Assembly (NCBI RefSeq): GCF_003704095.1
Contig: NW_020844573.1
Location: 744,001-808,000, forward strand
DNA length: 64,000 nt
Origin: Pocillopora damicornis
Lineage: Eukaryota
Reading direction: 5' to 3'
Shown: positions 52,551 through 64,000 of the stretch, one piece after another
Layout of the letters: each line of letters starts with the position of its first letter
How positions within the stretch are numbered: the stretch's first letter is position 1
Notes under the pieces: model-generated
Databases searched by the model: none
Seen by the model: the letters and a program-made list of their open reading frames with translations, nothing else
What the model was told of the DNA's origin: nothing
Position numbers and translations under genes: made by a program

Positions 52551-52994
52551 GTAGCTGAAACTTTTTAATGATGGATATGTACGTAACAAAATAAATGTCA
52601 AGTTCTAGACTCTGATGCTAATGATCAGATAAAGCCGGTTTTAGTGCAGTACAACTGGTTATGATTAACAATTTTTTTAATAATAAGCATACTTACAATG
52701 TTCAAGTTGGCTGTGAATGTTGTATCTGTCTGTCTGCAAGTTAAAATGACAAAAAATCTCACATCAAATCGCCGATTTATTATTTGGCAAGTTACATCTC
52801 TAGTTGATGGGCTACCTTTCCTTGATTATTACAAAACCGATCTCATTTTCGAACGTTTTGAACTCTAAAAAAGAATTTAACTCACCATTCTCGTGCGTCT
52901 TTCAGATCACCTACGATGGCGTCGGTAGCACGTAAGTGTAATTACCTCAGCGGTTCTTTTAGTTAACGCATGCCTATTGCGCGCTAAATTCAAA

Positions 52995-53547
52995 ATGGCG
53001 GTTCGGGTGGAGGAGCTCTCGAACACCGAGCCGCAAATTGATGGCATCAGCGGCGAGAAATATCGAGAGATAGGGGATCAGGCAGTGTGGTCGTTATCAT
53101 CATGTAAACCTGGCTTCGGAGTAGAGCAGCTTCGTGATGGAAACCTAGAAACGTACTGGCAATCTGATGGACCACAACCGCATTTGGTGAGCATTCAATT
53201 CCGGCGGAAAACAGCGATTCAAAACATTTGCTTGTACGCAGATTACAAGGCAGATGAAAGCTACACACCGAGTAAAATATCCGTTCGTGCTGGGAATCAC
53301 TTTCACGACCTACACCAGATAGAACTGATAGAGCTCGAGGAACCAAGCGGATGGCTGACAGTGTCTTTGTCGGATGGGGACAAGCCTTTGAAAACGTACA
53401 TGTTGCAAATAGCGGTTTTATCCAATCATCAAAACGGAAGGGACACTCACATGAGGCAGATCAAGATTCACGCGCCTTTAACAGATACTGGGGCTTACAA
53501 AATGCCCACTTTTACTTCTGTGGAGTGTGCTATGTACAGCACAATCA
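52995..53547 (+). CDS. ANAPC10: Anaphase-promoting complex subunit 10 (APC10/DOC1), single exon; last codon(s) and stop fall in the N gap
   Basis: REIGDQAVWSLSSCKPGFGVEQLRDGNLETYWQSDGPQPH...DESYTPSKIS...NHQNGRDTHMRQIKI...YSTI, with the C-terminal IR tail running into the gap. Confidence 0.95.
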
Positions 53548-56498
53548 NNNNNNNNNNNNNNNNNNNNNNNNNNNNNNNNNNNNNNNNNNNNNNNNNNNNN
53601 NNNNNNNNNNNNNNNNNNNNNNNNNNNNNNNNNNNNNNNNNNNNNNNACTTATGTTAATGACATCACAATCTCACTGTATTGACTCTACTGCTCTTAAGC
53701 TTAAAATTCTTTTGTTCAGATGTTAGATAAATATTATTTTATTATTTGCCAGTTTGCCAAAATTATCATGCAATTTTTGTTTAAGAAAATGGTTCAGCCT
53801 TGTGGCAACCCACCACACAGACCAGAAGACTAAAAAAATAGTACATGCATCTTGGACTGGATTAAACTTGGTAAGTATAAATTAAGAAAACAAGCAATCA
53901 TGATTTGAGAGTCCTTTTACTCCTGTTTGACTTAATTTGTGCTCGCATCTCTACTAATTAGTCATTTGTCTTTTGTTTTTCCCCAGATCAAAATCATTTA
54001 TGTAATCTCATGTTTCTGGAAAGTTTTAACGCTGTTTTCCAGCCAATACCTCAAATACCTTGTCTCTAGTTCAGCCAGTTGGGCCAAAGTGGCTTTCGCA
54101 TCAGAAATTTTTGTCTAACATTTTATTGTTTATAGTCTATGCCATGCTGTAACAGTTATTTAAAAGAAGTTGATTGCATTTCGTCATTAGACACTGAATA
54201 ATCACGAAAGCAGCTTTCTTGAAAACTCTTAAACTGTAGATACAGAAAGCCGTCAGAAAAAGGTGTTGATCTTTAGTTTAAGTAGTCGTTTGCCTTTGTA
54301 AAAAAAAGATGTGAGAGACTCCCCAAGTTGTACGGCTGAGCGTCTTCAAAACAAAATGAACTTGTTGAAGGAGCTTGTGCATCTTACAGAATTTCGTGTA
54401 CCTTGTTTGTAACCAGCGTTTATCTTCTCGGTATTTTTTAAATATATTCTTTTTTTATTCTGAAATTCTCGTCAATCCAGTTAGTTACTTGCTTCTTCTT
54501 TTTAATAGTCGTAAACAGCAGTTATCATCTAAAATGTTTAAAGCTACCCCTGAAAGGTTTCAACTGGGTGTCTCCATCAATTTTCACCATACAACCAAGA
54601 GGCAATTACGGGAGCTCCAAAGGTAGTCATTTTAGTTTAAATTAACAGAAGCGGAACAAGATCGGCGATTATAACAGCCGATGTAGGTGCGGTGTTCAAC
54701 CTCTTCATTTATATTTGGGACTTCCTTCCCGGGGCAAATAATAGAAGTGGAAGGGAAAAAAAAAAAAAACTTTCGGCAGTACAAAAACTCGGGTAAACTT
54801 TGATCGAAAAACATGATCTCTCTCGCTCTCCGTCAGTTTCAGGACCAGATTTTACTGACATTAAATCACAATAGATTCTTTATCCCTGAAACGGCAATCA
54901 GTACACAGTACTAATTATTGCCTTGCACGTTTTCTCATGGACGCGACTGGACGTTCCATCGACGTATAACTTTTAGGCGTGAATTATTTCCCTTTATAAG
55001 TAGACGTTGAAGTTGTCACTGTTCCCGTTTGACCTCTCTTGACTACAAAAGTGGGTCAAAAGTGTTTCCGTTTGATTCAGGCCTCGAGGCTAAAAAGCTG
55101 AGCCGACGCTTTCAAAGCCTTGTGGAGTCAATGCCGAGGCTGTAAACTGTCATTGATTAGGCAGTTAGTCAATAAGCGCTTGTTTTTGTTGATTTTTTTG
55201 TGTTGCTTAGTCAGTTCATGATTCTGTACTCATCACGTCATGTTCGGCTTTTTCACTTGGTTTTTACGAGTTAGACGCACGATTTTATAAGCCCACGATT
55301 ACGTAGTGAAGATTTTACTCTCGTTCAGTTTTAATACCTGATGTTTGTCCACAAGAAAGTCTTGACAGCAATTTAAGAGGCATACAGATTGTGAGCGATG
55401 AGACAAGCTGAAAATTTGTAAGTATAGTGAACGCGCTGGTTTTTATTTCGTTCAAAATTACGAAAAATGAAGTTTGACAACTAACACACCAGACCTAAAA
55501 GAAAAGGATAACTAAATCTGTGCCCCTTAAGGCAGTGAACTGTAATCATCCTTTGACTGTTTGAAAACAGATCATCAGTGGCATTGTCGTTTCAGTAACT
55601 TTACTTTTTGTGAGAGGGTTCTCAGTTGTCTCAGTGCAATATCACGTGTAATTAATAGACTTCTCTATTTGCGCATTATAACCCTCGTAACAAGCTTTAA
55701 GCTTTGTTTACAGTTCGAACAACGTGAAATTCTAATGAAATTTTACATGAATCAAGAACTGCAGCCAACGAGACCTTTTAGCTTAAAAGTAAAACTTAGC
55801 ACACTTGAAGACGCAATTTTTATGGGTTTACTCTTTCTTTCAGCGATTTAGTTCCGTAAAAATCGAGCTTGACTAGGAAAACAAGCCACTTAGAAACCAA
55901 AAGTCGGCACGGCTAAAGAAAATATCTGCATAAATTTCAATGATCTTCTAATTCGCTAATCCCAGCCAACAAAAGCGAAGTGGAATCATTTAGCTATCAT
56001 TATCATACTATTTGTTCGCGTGTACTAGCAAATGTTACTTATTTATCTTGAGCTCAAGCCAGAGAGAGTAACGCGCAGCAAAATACACAAGGAAACCTTG
56101 CATTTTGAGGTTTGTGCAGCGTGTGAAAATAATTTATTACGGCTCAACTGAAAGAAGCTTTTTCGTTTCACTTAATGAAAAAGCAGCATTTATTTGTTTC
56201 TTTTCAATAATAACCTTTACGTCAAACCCTTAAGATAATAATTTAGTCCACATGGGAATAATCTTGTTGGGTTTTAATTGGCTTCTAGCTTTCTCATTAC
56301 GGGAAGACAGCCGGCTTGACTAAATCCTTCTTCAATAAGTCTTTTGCATAACAGAGTTTATGTCAAGTGGCTGGAGTGAATCACTTAATCACCTCTCTTC
56401 CTAACGAGACACGCTTGTTGTTAAGCTATGTGGGAGTCCATGTTTCTAAGGAAAAACTATTTCCACGGAGTTTTCTTCGAATAGTTCATCCCTGAGAC

Positions 56499-59211: not shown

Positions 59212-60447
59212 CATCTTCAGAACTAAAGGCGTGGTATGAAGAGATCGCCCATTGGAAAGGAGGAGGAAAAGAATCGTGGCCGAGAGGGGGTTGGGGGTGA
59301 TGTTGTGTACGTCTTAGAAGGAAAATGACAAATAGTCTTTTTAAAAATGCGAAAGAATTGAATGTCGTTCGTATCAATTCCTCAAGAATGAGTATGGATG
59401 CTCTTTGAATGAGAAAATAACTAATATAAAAATAAAAAATTCGAATGGACATTTTAAGTTTCAAATTGTTTTAATTAAAAAATCGCATTGTCTCTGAGTG
59501 CTATGAAGAGGTGTTTCCTCTCGAGAAAAAGTGTTTAATAGCTGGAATTGTTTCGTTTTCAAGTCACATATCCATGTAAATAAACAAAGAACGAAAATGT
59601 CAAGTTTGAATTTCATGGTTACATTCTCTTTTTGCGTCTTTGTTTATGATTCCAGGAACTATTGTAAACGATAAACGAGAAAATATAAACAAAAGAGGGC
59701 CGTGCGATACATTTAAGGAAGTAAAAACTTTTTTTTAGGCCCTCTCTAAGCGCTGTTGTTTACTTGATCGCAAGAAAACTCCCTTCTAGTTCGATCTTAA
59801 AACTTGATTGTTCAAGAGTGTACTTTAAAGGAGAAGAGGAAAAGAAGGGAGGTGGGGGAGGGGTGAGTATCTCCAGAACCTTTGACTCCCGTCTGCCCCA
59901 TTGTGAAATACTGCTGATCAATAAGTAACAAATGTGCGCATTTTATAAAGAACGATGAGTGGAGTTAGGGCTTGTCACTTTTGACGTTTTTAGGCTTCTT
60001 GTTTCAGTTAAAATATGCAAGATTAAGTTAATTTCTCCCTCTTCAGATTCAAAATACGCGAATAAACCCAAAGTTCCGAAATGACAAAATAATAGCAACA
60101 ACAAAAAATTGTATCAAAATATTTTAAAAATTGACTTAATGCAAAAGTAGAGAAACAATGATGCATGAAAAATCTTGAAGATTCTTAAGGGGAAAACCAG
60201 TTCCTTTTCTAATGAAGATACTCTAGTTTTTTTTTTCTCAACTTTTTTTTCTCTTGATTAGTAAAGCACCCTGGGAAACCGTGTTATCATGAAAGTGAAA
60301 GTTGTGGAATCAAACAGAACATTCAATTTTATTGTTTTCCAGAAAACCAATGGGTAAAATAGCTGATGGTTTCATTCATACCTTTGTCTTGTCTTTCACC
60401 TTAAAATACCATTCAATACATCATTTAACCTTTTTTTAATGGTAATA

Positions 60448-63400
60448 TCAGTCTATTTTCAAGACATTTTCTGCAAGCATTATTTTTTCTTGAAGTTCCA
60501 GAGGATTTTTCAGAAGTCTGTGAAGGTCTTCTACACTCATTTCCAAAAGCATTCCTGTAATTTTATCAGCATTTTCAGAATGTGACTCCTCAATCTTCAC
60601 ATACAGTTGTTCCCCCAACTCTTCTTTCATGGAATCTCCTGGGCTGCAGTGTTTAGTTGGTTCCCTACGAAATGGGACTTCATGACTAATTTACAACACA
60701 TTCAGAGAGACAAAAATAAGAACTCTTGCAAAAGCTTATCAAAGTGAGGTTTTGGATTCAGGATATGCCTTGTCATTCTGAGAGAAGAACTTTTGCATAT
60801 TGAAAGATACAATAAAGGCTTTCTCATATATCAATGAAAATGTTTTCCAAAGGCAAAAGATCAATTGGAAATTTAAAAAAGTTTCAAATATTTACATTTA
60901 CAGTTAGTATATACTACTATTGACTATGCTTTTCGCATGTACTGATTGGCTAGTTTAGAGGTGATTAAAAGTACAATTGGCCAAATAAGACAATTTTTTG
61001 GGTTTTTGTGTGGTATATACTAAAACCATTTTTCACCATTAAAACTGGCTGATGTTTTTTCTCCTCTTTGGTGAATAATTGTAAATTATTATAGATAAAA
61101 AAATGGAAAAATAGAGTTTGACAGAGATGTCAATCATATCTGTTACAAATGTGACACAAAGAAGGAATCTGAGTCCCCCACAAGGAAATGAACTCCAGAT
61201 TTATTTGATTATTTTACTTGAAATACTTAAAGGTGACTTGTAAATACTTTTGACCTGCTCACCTGTTTGAGCTAGTTTGTTCCATTCTGTGTAGGACAGC
61301 TAATGCTCCCTCAACTTTTTCCTTCAAAATCTGCTTGTTTAAAACCAAATTCTCCAATGCTGCACTGTCAATATCCATCAACATGCCTGTCAATTTATGA
61401 GCTTTTCCTGGATACCAATCATTTATTATATCATAGAGCTTCTCTTCTAACCTTTTTATTGTTTCTGCTTCAGATTTTTCAGAAGGTGGTAGACTGTGTT
61501 GTGTTTCACTGTTAGTTTTTGTTGAGGTGAGGATGCTTGCAGCATATGCAGCTTTTTCTTGTAGTGCTGCAGAATCATTAAGCAACATTTCTAAAGTAGC
61601 AATATTCATTTCTAATAACATACCAGATATTTTGTCTGCATTCTCTGGGAACCATTCACAGATTTTGTAATACAGTTGTTCACCATAAACTGCTTTGTCT
61701 TCCTGTCCTGTTGAGGGTGATACAGTTTCACTTATGTCACTCTGATTATTGAGTGCCGATAATGCCTGATTCACTTTTTCTTTTAACACCTCTTGGTCTC
61801 TGAGGAGCACTTCTAAATCGTAAGCATCCATTTCTAGAAGCATCCCTGTGATTTTGTCAGCTTGATCACAGCCAAGTTCACTAACCAAACTATAAAGTTC
61901 TTCTCCGATAGAAGTCTTATCTTGACATTGTCTCTGTGCAGTCTCTGTTTGGCTATTTTTGATTTGTCCAGAGTCATTTTCCAAAAGTGATATGATTTCT
62001 CCCAGTTTTTGCTCTAACAAGTTTGAATCCTTGATCATGAGCTCTAAACTTTGAGTATCCATTTCTAGCAAAATTCCTGTCAATTTTTCTGCATCATCTG
62101 GATATTGCTCTTCAATCAAGGCATACATCTGTTCACCTAAGGCTTGTTTTGTTTTAAAATTGTCATTGTGGTGTGTAGAGGATTCAGACGGTAAAATGCT
62201 GCATCTTTCTAATTTATTACTTTTATCAGATATATCTGTGGATGAGTCTCTTACATGTGAATTCCCTCTGAAAGAAAGACAAGGATTTTCAGGGTTTGTG
62301 CTTTGTTCATTTGTGCTATCTTTGACCAGTTGACAATCTAACCTGCAGAAGTGTTGTATACATTGTGGTTAAAATAAAACTTTCACTCAGTTTTTTTTCC
62401 AAGCTGTAAAAGTTCAAGTTGAATTTACTTCATTTTAGATTACCTGATAGTACAAAGTTTCTAACAAAGAAAAACGAAAAATTTTTATCTAGTTTGAAAT
62501 GTTTTCACCCTAGAAACAAAATTGAACCATTAGAAATAGGAATTAGAACAAATTCAGTATTTGTGATTTTCCAGTGATTTATTTTTGCTAAAAGTTACTT
62601 TTACATGTCAAATAAAATTCATCCTTCAGTTCAAAACAATAAATTTTCATGACAAGCTCTATTTTCACTTTAAAAATTTCCATATATATTTTCAAAGATA
62701 ACACTGATAAATAATACTGAAACTTACTTTTGTTACAATTATTGCTGTGGCAGGAACCAAAGATAGACAAACAGGCACCATGGTTTATCATAAATCAAAT
62801 TTGTTAATTCTGATAAATTTTCATCAGAATAATTATATAGTCATGGAGCAATTTCATAAACAATAGGATTTTATGTGGGCTCTTTTGTTTGACGGAAATG
62901 TAGGGAATATTTACAACAAAAACAAACTAATGTTAACCTTTCAAGTGAAAACATAATCTGATCTGCTTTTATTTAAATCTAAAAGAATAATATCAAATCT
63001 TCCGAAAGTTTAACAAGATTAAACACCTTTAATTAATGCTGCTATTTTCTCCAATAGGAGAAAGACAAGGGGAAAAATTTTGGTGGCGAAAAAAAATGAT
63101 TAAAGAATTGATTGAGAAAATCAAAGGCAAGCTATAGTAATAATTTATTTAGGGAAAACAGCTGTCTTTAATTCGACTTCGGAATGAATCAACAGGATTT
63201 CAATCACGCGATCTTGAAGATCGTTGGGGAAGAGATCGAAAGTGTCCGAGTAAAAGCCTTTACGCTAACCAACTGGTAATTTTGGCTTACCTTTCGGGAA
63301 GTACATGCCCTGCAGCTTTGTGAATCTTACAAAGAAGCTCTTCACGATTTGTTGAGGTTAGAATTCGTTTGAGTTCATTGCAGTCTAACTCCAGTAACAT

Positions 63401-63508
63401 ACCAGTAATGTAATCAGCATGTTCTGGATATATTTGTTGCACTATTTCGTACAATTCCTCTCCAAAGTCAGCTTCATTTTTCTCGCGTTCACTGAGTGAA
63501 TTTCCCAT
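60448..63508 (-). CDS. Protein of six tandem MLLE (PABC) domains with an N-myristoylation motif, ~504 aa. Coding exons 63508-63291, 62342-61263, 60664-60448
   Basis: Six repeats of K..(L/I/F/Y)GE.LY..I...(Y/H/F)P..A.K(I/L)TG(M/I)LLE(M/L)D...L..LL.....L.EK...A...L, matching the PABP/UBR5 MLLE pattern. Both introns are phase 2 and GT-AG. Starts MGNSLS in a strong Kozak context (aaaATGG). Confidence 0.88.
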
Positions 63509-63849
63509 TTTCCTGCACAAAGAGCTCACGAGTGAATGACGAATGCCAGCCAGAGCCTTTCTGGGGTGAGGGGAGTTTCGAAGCGATTTAAAGAGCATTT
63601 TTTGCTTAATAAGATACAATCCTTTCCTACGTTTACAAAAAAAAAACCGAAAATAAATTTAGATTCTAAATGCCTTCCATCTTGTCGGAGTTGTGTTTTT
63701 TTAAAGCTTATTTATTTTGATGTTTCTGTAAGCAAATCATACCCTCCCTCCCCCGCAGGTGAGACAAGTTAGGTCTTTGGTAGAACCCAGGTTGTTGCGG
63801 TCGTTCCTTTCGTACACAGACTTGTCGCTGATTAAATCTCGGGTTCAAA

Positions 63850-63867
63850 ATGGCGCGGGAACTTGAG
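63850..63867 (+). CDS. Possible 18-nt first coding exon (MARELE) of a divergently transcribed gene continuing beyond the window
   Basis: caaaATGGCGCGGGAACTTGAG|gtacaa: the same aaaATGGCG start context as ANAPC10, followed by a GT donor and T-rich intron-like sequence. Confidence 0.35.
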
Positions 63868-64000
63868 GTACAAAGTCTTTCTGCGTTTCTTTTTTCTTTT
63901 AGGCTTTCTAACGATTCTGCGAAGTTTCTTAACGCAGTTTTTTAAATAAGCACATCGAGTTAAACGCTATGAAACATTTTTATTTCAGGAAAAACATTCA

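What the first reader, a model, noticed from the sequence alone, without database searches (positions are those of the whole stretch)
60448..63508. Stand-alone six-MLLE protein with an N-myristoylation motif: candidate membrane scaffold for mRNP/PAM2 factors
Seen: a 3-exon, ~504-aa ORF made only of six MLLE/PABC repeats (cores ADYITGMLLEL, AEKLTGILLEM, ADKITGMLLEM, ADKISGMLLEM, AHKLTGMLMDI, ADKITGMLLEM) with S/T/E-rich linkers, starting MGNSLS (G2 and S6). There is no RRM or HECT domain. Established: MLLE domains bind PAM2-motif proteins (PAIP1/2, eRF3, TOB, PAN3, GW182, ataxin-2, LARP4). In animals they are known as single copies in PABPC proteins and UBR5; the fungal endosomal mRNA transporter Rrm4 has three. 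Inference: this may be a multivalent membrane-anchored adaptor or decoy that tethers translation/decay factors or mRNPs to membranes, analogous to fungal endosome-coupled mRNA transport. I do not know of a described animal protein with this architecture.
Basis: partly seen in the sequence, partly recalled or inferred. Interest (0 to 1): 0.9.

Follow-up and report, generated by a model that had tools for sequence, protein, structure and literature searches.

The report
Coral protein of six MLLE domains
This is a real, expressed and conserved coral gene whose protein is six copies of the peptide-docking MLLE domain of poly(A)-binding protein, with a conserved lipid-attachment motif at its start; such proteins occur across animals, but I found no published study of them.

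Summary
On the minus strand, three exons (63508-63291; 62342 or 62267-61263; 60664-60448) encode a 504-aa protein, or 479 aa from an alternative acceptor. Pfam finds six MLLE domains and nothing else. RNA contigs from four studies confirm both introns. No upstream exon joins exon 1, so there is no RRM or HECT part.

The MLLE domains are under purifying selection (dN/dS 0.18-0.29) and the linkers evolve faster. A fold of exon 2 gives four confident helical bundles joined by disordered linkers. Five repeats keep most of the PAM2-contact residues listed for PABPC1. Repeat 5 is a conserved variant.

The start MGNSxSE(R/H) is conserved in every stony coral checked. Acropora has MGSSGS and three sea anemones have MGN. 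All fit the N-myristoylation pattern. Fish, echinoderm, hemichordate and mollusc relatives lack Gly2.

Caveats: Pocillopora has an in-frame ATG 30 codons upstream that some RNA contigs cover. No second membrane signal exists. No binding was shown.

The family is widespread in animals (3 to about 17 repeats) and is annotated only as "PABC domain-containing protein". The papers I found describe only PABPC, UBR5 and Rrm4. Best reading: a multivalent PAM2-docking platform, probably myristoylated. A stable membrane scaffold remains speculative.

The parts
63291..63508 (-). Exon 1 coding part (72 codons plus 2 nt). It starts MGNSLSEREKNEADF and contains MLLE1.
   Evidence: Translation. The donor at 63290 is used in RNA contigs of runs X1, X6 and X10. 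Pfam MLLE E 1.1e-12.
63488..63508 (-). N-terminal motif M-G-N-S-L-S-E. It fits the N-myristoylation pattern G-{EDRKHPFYW}-x(2)-[STAGCN]-{P}, which I recalled from PROSITE PS00008.
   Evidence: Conserved as MGNS[LQVA]SE[RH] in loci L004, L005 and L007-L010 and in Oculina P0121. Acropora has MGSSGS, Nematostella MGNSGS, Exaiptasia MGNSEG and Actinia MGNFVG. The pattern test is a regular expression.
63509..63598 (-). In-frame upstream extension of 30 codons (MLFKSLRNSPHPRKALAGIRHSLVSSLCRK) starting at the ATG at 63598-63596. It is probably 5' leader or promoter, not conserved coding sequence.
   Evidence: It is present in L004 and is used by the P. meandrina model P0122. In-frame stops interrupt it in L005, L009 and L010. 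It shows 3/30 aa changes against P. meandrina, versus 0/72 in exon 1. RNA contigs of X6 and X10 cover it; the X1 contig stops at 63531.
63556..63576 (-). Conserved non-coding CACCC-like block (ACTCCCCTCACCCCAGAAAGG) between the upstream ATG and the main ATG. It may be a promoter-proximal element.
   Evidence: Alignment of the 200 nt upstream of the ATG from six coral loci.
63293..63478 (-). MLLE1 (core ADYITGMLLEL). Tyr replaces the equivalent of PABPC1 Lys580.
62268..62342 (-). Alternative 75 nt (25 codons, LDCQLVKDSTNEQSTNPENPCLSFR) at the 5' end of exon 2. It is present only in the long (504-aa) form.
   Evidence: The joint to 62342 is seen in X1 and X10, and the joint to 62267 in X1 and X6. 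Both are in frame.
61263..62267 (-). Exon 2 core: a disordered Ser/Thr-rich lead-in followed by MLLE2 to MLLE5.
   Evidence: Pfam finds 4 MLLE stretches, E 3.8e-58. The AlphaFold2 model has four helical bundles at pLDDT about 90, linkers below 50 and pTM 0.27. The top Foldseek matches are MLLE structures.
61955..62152 (-). MLLE2 (AEKLTGILLEM)
61724..61921 (-). MLLE3 (ADKITGMLLEM)
61502..61699 (-). MLLE4 (ADKISGMLLEM)
61265..61462 (-). MLLE5, a variant repeat (AHKLTGMLMDI). The Gly563 equivalent is Glu and the signature reads MLMD instead of MLLE.
   Evidence: The same variant occurs in Oculina and Desmophyllum. It forms its own clade in the repeat tree.
60448..60664 (-). Exon 3 coding part (1 nt plus 71 codons plus stop TGA at 60450-60448) with MLLE6 (ADKITGMLLEM, 60451-60630).
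   Evidence: The acceptor at 60665/60664 is used in all four runs. Pfam MLLE E 2.3e-17.
60421..60447 (-). Short 3' UTR up to a proximal poly(A) site, with ATTAAA at 60440-60435. Longer 3' UTRs also occur.
   Evidence: A poly(T) loose end lies before L002 position 121 in X5. Contigs of X1 and X6 run further downstream.

Best explanation
This is a functional, expressed gene of a Pocillopora-like stony coral. Its product consists of six MLLE (PABC) domains strung on disordered Ser/Thr/Glu-rich linkers, with no RNA-binding or catalytic domain. Shown here: the gene model, its splicing, its expression, its domain content, purifying selection on the domains, and a six-repeat array old enough to be shared position by position with Oculina. 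Inferred: each canonical repeat (1-4 and 6) docks one PAM2-type short linear motif, as the MLLE of PABPC1 does. The protein would then be a multivalent platform that gathers or sequesters PAM2 proteins away from the poly(A) tail. Candidates present in this genome are an eRF3-like protein and HELZ2-like nucleases. Repeat 5 lacks the small residue that forms the Phe pocket and probably reads a different motif, like the accessory MLLEs of Rrm4. Also inferred: the conserved N-terminus MGNSxSE(R/H) is N-myristoylated co-translationally. With no second membrane signal, this would give at most weak or switchable attachment to a membrane or a hydrophobic pocket. My odds: PAM2-type docking about 0.75, myristoylation in hexacorals about 0.55, stable membrane anchoring about 0.2.
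For: Six Pfam MLLE hits and no other domain. Both introns and an alternative acceptor appear in RNA contigs of four studies, and no upstream exon joins exon 1. dN/dS is 0.18-0.29 in the MLLE domains and 0.44-0.89 in the linkers across five coral loci. pN/pS is 0.40 against a 96% identical relative. Pocillopora and Oculina repeats pair 1:1 with strong support. The AF2 model shows four confident helical bundles, disordered linkers and pTM 0.27. The best structural matches are solved MLLE and MLLE-PAM2 complexes, with TM up to 0.93. Equivalents of the PAM2-contact residues of PABPC1 listed in PMC2854688 are kept as follows: Glu564 in 6/6, Tyr for Phe567 in 6/6, Lys606 in 6/6, Gly563 in 5/6, Lys580 in 5/6, Ala610 in 5/6, and Thr582, Met584 and Leu586 each in 5/6 with a conservative change in the sixth. 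The genome encodes PAM2 ligands, including an eRF3-like exon with overlapping twin PAM2 motifs. The N-terminal motif is conserved in every hexacoral checked and fits the myristoylation pattern. The sequence upstream of it is not conserved as coding.
Against: No binding was measured. The one complex prediction gave no verdict. All six repeats carry Asp, Glu or His where PABPC1 has Gly579, and several minor contact positions differ, so specificity may differ from PABPC1. Myristoylation rests on a motif only. The residues that follow it are acidic (EREKNEAD), with no Cys or basic cluster. In this genus an in-frame ATG lies 30 codons upstream. It is covered by RNA contigs in two of three studies that cover exon 1, and the P. 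meandrina annotation uses it. Deuterostome and mollusc homologues lack Gly2, so lipidation cannot be essential to the family's core function.
Confidence: 0.55

Rival explanations
1. It is a soluble decoy. The protein is cytosolic and unlipidated, at least in Pocillopora, where translation would start at the upstream ATG. It acts as a sponge that competes with PABPC for PAM2 factors such as eRF3, PAN3, Tob and Paip-like proteins, and so tunes translation termination and deadenylation. The plant single-domain protein MPC has been proposed to act this way.
For: There is no RNA-binding domain. Canonical contact residues are kept. The upstream in-frame ATG is covered by contigs of X6 and X10 and is used in the P. 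meandrina model. Homologues outside Cnidaria lack Gly2. No second membrane signal is present.
Against: MGNSxSE(R/H) is nearly invariant in corals that are otherwise 45-60% identical, and Gly2 is kept in Acropora and three anemones. That conservation needs an explanation. The extension is interrupted by stops in three other corals. It also changes faster than exon 1 between Pocillopora species.
Confidence: 0.25
2. It is a stable membrane scaffold for mRNPs. The myristoylated array would sit on an organelle or the plasma membrane and tether PAM2 factors or whole mRNPs there. This would be an animal counterpart of endosome-coupled mRNA transport by Rrm4 and Upa1 in fungi.
For: The myristoylation motif is conserved. 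The architecture is multivalent and flexible, like the Rrm4 MLLE platform (PMC9249222). One mollusc gene model fuses a 7TM receptor to four MLLE domains (P0152), though it may be a merged gene model.
Against: By established knowledge, a single myristate without palmitoylation or a basic patch binds membranes only weakly. The N-terminus here is acidic and has no Cys. The protein cannot bind RNA itself. I have no localisation or partner data.
Confidence: 0.17
3. It is an artefact: a fragment of a PABP or UBR5 gene, a pseudogene, or a chance ORF.
For: Nothing beyond the absence of other domains.
Against: Spliced polyadenylated transcripts occur in four studies, with no upstream exon joined. The upstream neighbour is on the opposite strand. 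Separate PABPC-like and UBR5-like MLLE loci exist. The domains are under purifying selection. Orthologues occur in many corals and anemones.
Confidence: 0.02

Closest known systems
[quoted passage not shown]
   Same: Same domain family: Pfam PF00658, the same helical bundle, the KITGMLLE signature and most PAM2-contact residues.
   Different: PABPC1 has four RRMs and a single MLLE. This protein has no RRM and six MLLEs. All six repeats have an acidic residue or His where PABPC1 has Gly579, and Tyr where it has Phe567 (as in UBR5, from my recollection of its sequence).
Rrm4 of Ustilago maydis (three MLLE domains; binds PAM2-like motifs of the endosomal adaptor Upa1)
   Same: Several MLLE domains on flexible linkers form a binding platform. 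A hierarchy of canonical and variant repeats is plausible: MLLE5 here lacks the Gly of the Phe pocket, as MLLE1 and MLLE2 of Rrm4 do (PMC9249222).
   Different: Rrm4 has three RRMs, binds mRNA itself, and reaches membranes through Upa1's FYVE domain. This protein has no RRM and would carry its own lipid. The two are not orthologous.
UBR5/EDD/HYD MLLE
   Same: Tyr at the Phe567 position. The sequence hit to 3ntw is E 4e-5. Some fish homologues are auto-named 'E3 ubiquitin-protein ligase hyd-like'.
   Different: There is no HECT, UBA or UBR domain here. The genome has a separate UBR5-like MLLE locus on another contig.
Arabidopsis MPC (MATERNALLY EXPRESSED PAB C-TERMINAL), a stand-alone PABC protein
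   Same: An MLLE-only protein without RRMs. I recall it being proposed to act by competing for PABP partners. I confirmed only that the name occurs in papers.
   Different: It has a single domain, is from plants and has no lipidation motif. It is not orthologous.
Uncharacterised animal 'PABC domain-containing proteins'
   Same: These are true homologues, and within hexacorals orthologues. Examples: P. meandrina CAH3105765.1 (96-100% identical per exon), Oculina KAL9956492.1 (six repeats, MGNSQSER), Nematostella XP_001630622.2, Exaiptasia and Actinia (four repeats, MGN...). More distant members occur in fish, coelacanth, sharks, amphioxus, echinoderms, hemichordates, gastropods and octopus.
   Different: Repeat number ranges from 3 to about 17. 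Only the hexacoral members start with Gly2. None has a published function that I could find.

Membership tests
MLLE/PABC domain family (PF00658) | Profile match above the curated cut-off | tested here: met
   Six stretches. Whole-piece scores are 48, 194 and 63 bits against a 27-bit cut-off. A six-frame genome scan finds the same six stretches.
MLLE/PABC domain family (PF00658) | Four- or five-helix bundle fold | tested here: met
   In the AF2 model of exon 2, each repeat is a bundle of four helices at pLDDT about 90. Foldseek's best matches are PABPC1 and UBR5 MLLE structures, with target TM 0.87-0.93 and rmsd about 1 A. Repeats 1 and 6 were not folded.
MLLE/PABC domain family (PF00658) | KITGMLLE signature helix and conserved PAM2-contact residues | tested here: met
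   The signature reads xITGMLLE, KLTGILLE or KISGMLLE in five repeats and KLTGMLMD in repeat 5. The Gly563 equivalent is kept in 5/6, and Glu564 and Lys606 in 6/6 (residue list from PMC2854688).
MLLE/PABC domain family (PF00658) | Binds PAM2 or PAM2-like peptides | tested here: inconclusive
   A complex prediction of MLLE6 with the coral's own eRF3-like twin-PAM2 exon scored 0.19, below the 0.34 mark. That is no verdict either way. It needs ITC or pull-down.
Cytoplasmic poly(A)-binding proteins (PABPC) | Four N-terminal RRM domains on the same polypeptide | tested here: not met
   No RRM hit in any exon. No spliced contig joins exon 1 to an upstream exon. The 10 kb upstream holds a gene on the opposite strand with no RRM hit in the four ORFs scanned. 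A PABPC-like MLLE lies on another contig.
UBR5/HYD E3 ligases | A HECT domain with the MLLE inserted | tested here: not met
   No HECT hit. A UBR5-like MLLE lies on contig C2498.
Rrm4-type endosomal mRNA transporters | Three RRMs plus three C-terminal MLLE domains, fungal | tested here: not met
   No RRM. The organism is an animal, not a fungus. The resemblance is one of architecture only.
N-myristoylated proteins (NMT substrates) | Gly at position 2 and the sequence pattern G-{EDRKHPFYW}-x(2)-[STAGCN]-{P} | tested here: met
   MGNSLSE fits. The Oculina, Acropora, Nematostella, Exaiptasia and Actinia proteins passed the pattern test. The N-termini of five further coral loci fit it by eye.
N-myristoylated proteins (NMT substrates) | Translation really starts at the Met before that Gly | tested here: inconclusive
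   Across species, stops or unrelated sequence lie upstream, and the ATG context is AAAATGG. In this genus, however, an in-frame ATG lies 30 codons upstream. Contigs of X6 and X10 extend over it, while the X1 contig ends at 63531. Contigs cannot place a 5' end.
N-myristoylated proteins (NMT substrates) | Covalent myristate on Gly2 | not testable with these tools
   Needs metabolic labelling or an in vitro NMT assay.

The most novel reading that the evidence does not exclude
Animals have an unstudied, ancient family of RNA-binding-free MLLE-array proteins with 3 to about 17 repeats. In hexacorals the family gained a myristoyl anchor. The array would then recruit PAM2 proteins, such as the termination factor eRF3, deadenylase adaptors and the expanded HELZ2-like helicase-nucleases, to a membrane surface. 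That would create a lipid-tethered hub for local control of translation or RNA decay, reached by a different route from fungal endosomal mRNA hitch-hiking.
Probability: 0.17. Interest if true: 0.8.

Novelty: new variant of a known kind. Interest (0 to 1): 0.58.

Why it matters
The two Rrm4 papers I read (2022 and 2024) describe MLLE domains in only three protein types: PABPC, UBR5 and fungal Rrm4. The 2022 paper calls Rrm4 the first protein with several MLLE domains. This gene shows that animals carry a conserved family made only of MLLE arrays. Such proteins should compete with, or act in parallel to, poly(A)-binding protein for the same docking motifs. This is a layer of control over translation termination, deadenylation and RNA decay that I did not find examined anywhere. 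The hexacoral members add a conserved lipidation motif, so a link between PAM2 networks and membranes can be tested directly in Nematostella and Exaiptasia. Vertebrate members exist in fish, sharks, coelacanth and lungfish, so zebrafish genetics is also available. If the protein proves to be only a soluble decoy, the finding is more modest but still fills an annotation gap.

Tried and rejected
1. Complex prediction of MLLE6 (window:60451-60642:-) with the coral's own eRF3-like PAM2 exon (L014:1465-1596:+). The score was 0.19 in both runs, below the mark, and controls were not run. This is no verdict and I do not use it either way (after three busy refusals).

2. Placing the 5' end from RNA. 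Only Logan contigs were available, not raw reads. They end at 63531 (X1), 63747 (X10) and 63819 (X6). They are unstranded and may merge with the head-to-head neighbour, so the start site and the use of the upstream ATG stay open.

3. Earlier notes of this scan, searched by place and by words. Nothing was found.

4. Literature searches for tandem, multiple or stand-alone animal MLLE proteins, for 'PABC domain-containing', and for MLLE together with myristoylation. None gave a relevant description. A search for HELZ2 with Nematostella and antiviral found nothing.

5. A search for an upstream MLLE exon or MG start at the distant five-repeat locus L011. None was found and its organism is unknown.

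6. A PABP fragment or a pseudogene. Rejected; see the rival explanations.

7. The 30-codon upstream extension looks basic, like a targeting peptide. I considered it as a real presequence and judged it unlikely. Stops interrupt it in three other corals, and it changes faster than exon 1.

8. The joined 504-aa protein was never assembled for a search, a fold or a predictor. All searches and folds were done exon by exon, by reference. No whole-protein NMT predictor or whole-protein fold was run.
Full report
**What is there.**
The gene lies on the minus strand. I scanned the segments exon by exon, by reference. Pfam gives MLLE (PF00658) once in exon 1 (E 1.1e-12), four times in exon 2 (E 3.8e-58) and once in exon 3 (E 2.3e-17). 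No other family reaches its cut-off. A six-frame scan of the whole assembly finds eight MLLE stretches. Six are in this gene, one is on contig C1056 and one is on C2498. The C1056 stretch reads like a PABPC C-terminus and the C2498 stretch like UBR5. This is therefore the only MLLE array in the genome, and it is separate from the two classical MLLE genes.

**Transcript evidence.**
RNA runs from at least four studies of coral or marine metatranscriptomes hold 35-53% of the sampled words of the 3.06-kb stretch. That is about what the exons alone would give. I laid contigs of four runs on 6 kb around the gene (L002; window coordinate = L002 position + 60300). They give these minus-strand GT..AG introns:
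- Intron 1 runs 63290-62343 in X1 and X10.
- Intron 1 alternatively runs 63290-62268 in X1 and X6.
- Intron 2 runs 61262-60665 in all four runs.

The two acceptors of intron 1 are in frame and differ by 25 codons.

A poly(T) loose end marks a proximal poly(A) site near 60421, after ATTAAA at 60440-60435. Other contigs run further downstream.

No joint enters exon 1 from upstream. The other joints (63865/63987 and two beyond the window end) are GT..AG on the plus strand. They belong to a head-to-head neighbour whose ORFs have no Pfam hit.

**The start codon.**
The frame stays open upstream of MGNSLS, and a second ATG lies 30 codons earlier at 63598-63596. I fetched related loci for comparison.
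- A 96% identical Tara Pacific scaffold (L004) has the same extension.
- Five more distant coral loci (L005, L007-L010) all start exon 1 with MGNS[QLVA]SE[RH].
- Upstream of that start, three of them have in-frame stops and the other two have unrelated sequence.
- The only conserved upstream feature is a non-coding CACCC-like block (63576-63556), which lies between the two ATGs.

The cluster that holds the near-identical ORF also holds a Pocillopora meandrina model, CAH3105765.1, 'PABC domain-containing protein', 509 aa. That model uses the upstream ATG and the short acceptor. Against it, the extension differs at 3 of 30 residues and exon 1 at 0 of 72. The Oculina patagonica model (503 aa, six repeats) starts MGNSQSERDK.

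The conserved, ancestral start is therefore the MGNS codon, in the context AAAATGG. Whether Pocillopora also makes an N-terminally extended product is open. Contigs of X6 and X10 run over the upstream ATG, to 63819 and 63747, while the X1 contig stops at 63531. These contigs are unstranded, they cannot define a 5' end, and they could merge with the divergent neighbour.

From the assembly size (234 Mb in 4,393 contigs), which I recall as that of the published P. damicornis assembly, I suspect the genome is P. damicornis. This is an inference only.

**The N-terminal motif.**
All the following N-termini fit the N-myristoylation pattern G-{EDRKHPFYW}-x(2)-[STAGCN]-{P}, which I recalled from PROSITE PS00008 (pattern test; sequences):
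- MGNSLSE in the window, and its coral variants
- MGSSGS in the Acropora cluster
- MGNSGS in Nematostella XP_001630622.2
- MGNSEG in Exaiptasia
- MGNFVG in Actinia

The first eight residues are nearly invariant among corals whose proteins are otherwise 45-60% identical. That argues for a constrained function at the extreme N-terminus.

Three points argue against a firm membrane anchor. The following residues are acidic (EREKNEAD). There is no nearby Cys or basic cluster. MLLE1 begins about 14 residues after Gly2. By established knowledge, a lone myristate binds membranes weakly and often acts as a switch.

Homologues in fish, coelacanth, shark, brittle star, sea star, acorn worm, gastropod and octopus do not start with Gly2. 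The motif therefore appears to be a hexacoral feature, not a family feature. I did not sample octocorals or medusozoans.

**Are the repeats functional MLLEs?**
I aligned the six repeats with the coral's own PABPC MLLE and mapped the contact residues listed for human PABPC1-eRF3 (PMC2854688). The equivalents in repeats 1 to 6 are as follows:

| PABPC1 residue | Repeats 1 to 6 |
|---|---|
| Gly563 | G, G, G, G, E, G |
| Glu564 | E in all six |
| Phe567 | Y in all six (as in UBR5, from my recollection of its sequence) |
| Gly579 | D, E, D, D, H, D |
| Lys580 | Y, K, K, K, K, K |
| Thr582 | T, T, T, S, T, T |
| Met584 | M, I, M, M, M, M |
| Leu586 | L, L, L, L, M, L |
| Glu587 | E, E, E, E, D, E |
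| Lys606 | K in all six |
| Ala610 | A, I, A, A, A, A |

Repeats 1-4 and 6 look canonical. Repeat 5 lacks the small residue that lines the Phe pocket. This parallels the accessory MLLEs of Rrm4, which have Ser or Arg there (PMC9249222). The same variant is conserved in Oculina and Desmophyllum.

The acidic or His residue at the Gly579 position in every repeat is a family trait. It could shift the preference at PAM2 position 9. This is an inference and was not tested.

An AlphaFold2 model of the exon 2 product, built with a 35-sequence alignment, has four helical bundles at pLDDT about 90. The linkers and the first 60 residues are below 50, and pTM is 0.27. This is a beads-on-a-string arrangement. 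Foldseek's best matches are solved MLLE domains, many with bound PAM2 peptides. Target TM reaches 0.93 at rmsd about 1 A, although E-values are modest because the domain is small within a long query. A sequence search of the PDB with exon 3 gives PABPC1 MLLE entries at E about 1e-6.

**Selection and age.**
Against five coral loci, dN/dS is 0.18-0.29 in the MLLE codons and 0.44-0.89 in the linkers. Against the 96% identical relative, pN/pS is 0.40 from 34 differences.

In a tree of single repeats, each Pocillopora repeat pairs with the Oculina repeat at the same position, with strong support. The six-repeat array therefore predates their split. Anemone repeats 1 and 2 group with coral repeat 1. 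Deuterostome repeats also pair by position. Deeper nodes are unresolved because only 58 columns were available.

**Possible ligands in the same genome.**
A PAM2 profile scan finds, among others, an exon with the overlapping twin PAM2 motifs typical of eRF3 (L014). It also finds at least four large ORFs that Pfam reads as HELZ2-like (AAA_12 helicase end, HELZ2 OB fold and RNB nuclease), each with a PAM2 motif between the helicase and the OB fold. A complex prediction of MLLE6 with the eRF3-like exon gave no verdict.

**How wide is the family?**
A word-indexed search with exon 2 found 342 proteins. The named ones come from Desmophyllum, Exaiptasia, Actinia, many teleosts, sturgeon, paddlefish, bowfin, sharks, coelacanth, lungfish, a brittle star, a sea star and an acorn worm. 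Nearly all are labelled 'uncharacterized' or 'PABC domain-containing', and a few are mislabelled 'hyd-like' or 'polyadenylate-binding'.

An exhaustive profile-free search gave 559 cluster representatives. They include models from amphioxus, a gastropod (1573 aa, seven MLLE stretches) and octopus (593 aa with six stretches, and 1754 aa with about 17 cores). Some are fusion models: 7TM receptor plus four MLLE, PHAX domain plus four MLLE, MIF4G plus RRM plus three MLLE, and a plant F-box protein with four MLLE. Some of these fusions may be merged gene models.

**Literature.**
The 2022 Rrm4 paper states that, besides PABPC1, only UBR5 and Rrm4-type proteins with MLLE domains have been described. 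It also states that Rrm4 is the first protein with multiple MLLE domains. Searches for tandem, multiple or stand-alone MLLE proteins, for 'PABC domain-containing', and for MLLE with myristoylation found nothing relevant. A plant single-domain stand-alone protein, MPC, exists. I know this from memory, and one search confirms only that the name occurs.

**Verdict.**
The claim that no such animal protein is known holds only for the published literature, because databases hold many uncharacterised homologues. The membrane scaffold idea goes beyond the evidence.

The best-supported reading is a multivalent, RNA-binding-free docking platform for PAM2-type motifs. It is probably myristoylated in hexacorals, and its membrane association is open.

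The joined spliced protein was never used in any search or fold. All work was done exon by exon. Masked N stretches near the UBR5-like locus and near 53.7 kb in the window were left as they are.

Noticed in passing
window 63865-64000 and beyond (G000:C1208:807865-810197; L002 3565-5897): A head-to-head plus-strand gene lies next to the MLLE gene. Its first exon ends 357 bp from the MLLE gene's ATG. Spliced exons are seen at L002 3687-3846, 4946-5082 and 5307-5897, continuing into an ORF at L003 2774-3736. The product is Ser/Glu/Lys-rich with no Pfam hit. The two genes probably share a bidirectional promoter.
   Followed up: partly
L013 (G000:C1978), L015 (G000:C1208:469359-472400, same contig as the window), L017 (C3341), L018 (C1840): At least four PAM2-bearing paralogues. 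L013 and L017 were read by Pfam as HELZ2-like (AAA_12 helicase end and HELZ2 OB fold; an RNB nuclease start in L013 only). L015 and L018 share the same sequence context around the motif. In each, the PAM2 motif lies between the helicase and the OB fold. They are candidate ligands for MLLE proteins. Whether HELZ2-type proteins are known to carry PAM2 was not checked.
   Followed up: partly
L014:1501-1572 (G000:C666:390325-390396): An exon with two overlapping PAM2 motifs (LNVNAKPFVPNVNAPAFVPSFL). This is the arrangement described for human eRF3, so it appears to be conserved in this coral.
   Followed up: partly
window 63556-63576: A CACCC-like block (ACTCCCCTCACCCCAGAAAGG) is conserved about 50-70 nt upstream of the start codon in all six coral loci compared, although the surrounding sequence is not alignable.
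   Followed up: partly
window 62268-62342 and 60421: An alternative 3' splice site adds 25 residues in a disordered region, and both forms occur in one run. At least two poly(A) sites are used.
   Followed up: yes
window 52977-53726 (+): An ORF that I recognised by eye as anaphase-promoting complex subunit 10 (DOC domain) runs into a masked run of N. It was not searched or filled.
   Followed up: no
P0280, P0137, P0152, P0142, P0148 (other organisms): Extreme or fused MLLE arrays occur in public gene models. They include Octopus vulgaris (about 17 cores in 1754 aa), Babylonia areolata (7 MLLE in 1573 aa), Nucella lapillus (7TM receptor plus 4 MLLE), Kingdonia uniflora (4 MLLE plus F-box plus propeller), and a PHAX-domain plus 4 MLLE protein from a JGI contig. 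Some may be merged gene models.
   Followed up: partly
L005:8001-9176 (protein P0005): In one coral, the large exon runs straight from the MLLE4 equivalent into the MLLE6 equivalent. Repeat 5 and intron 2 are missing, so the gene has five repeats. This is either a lineage-specific loss or an assembly feature.
   Followed up: no
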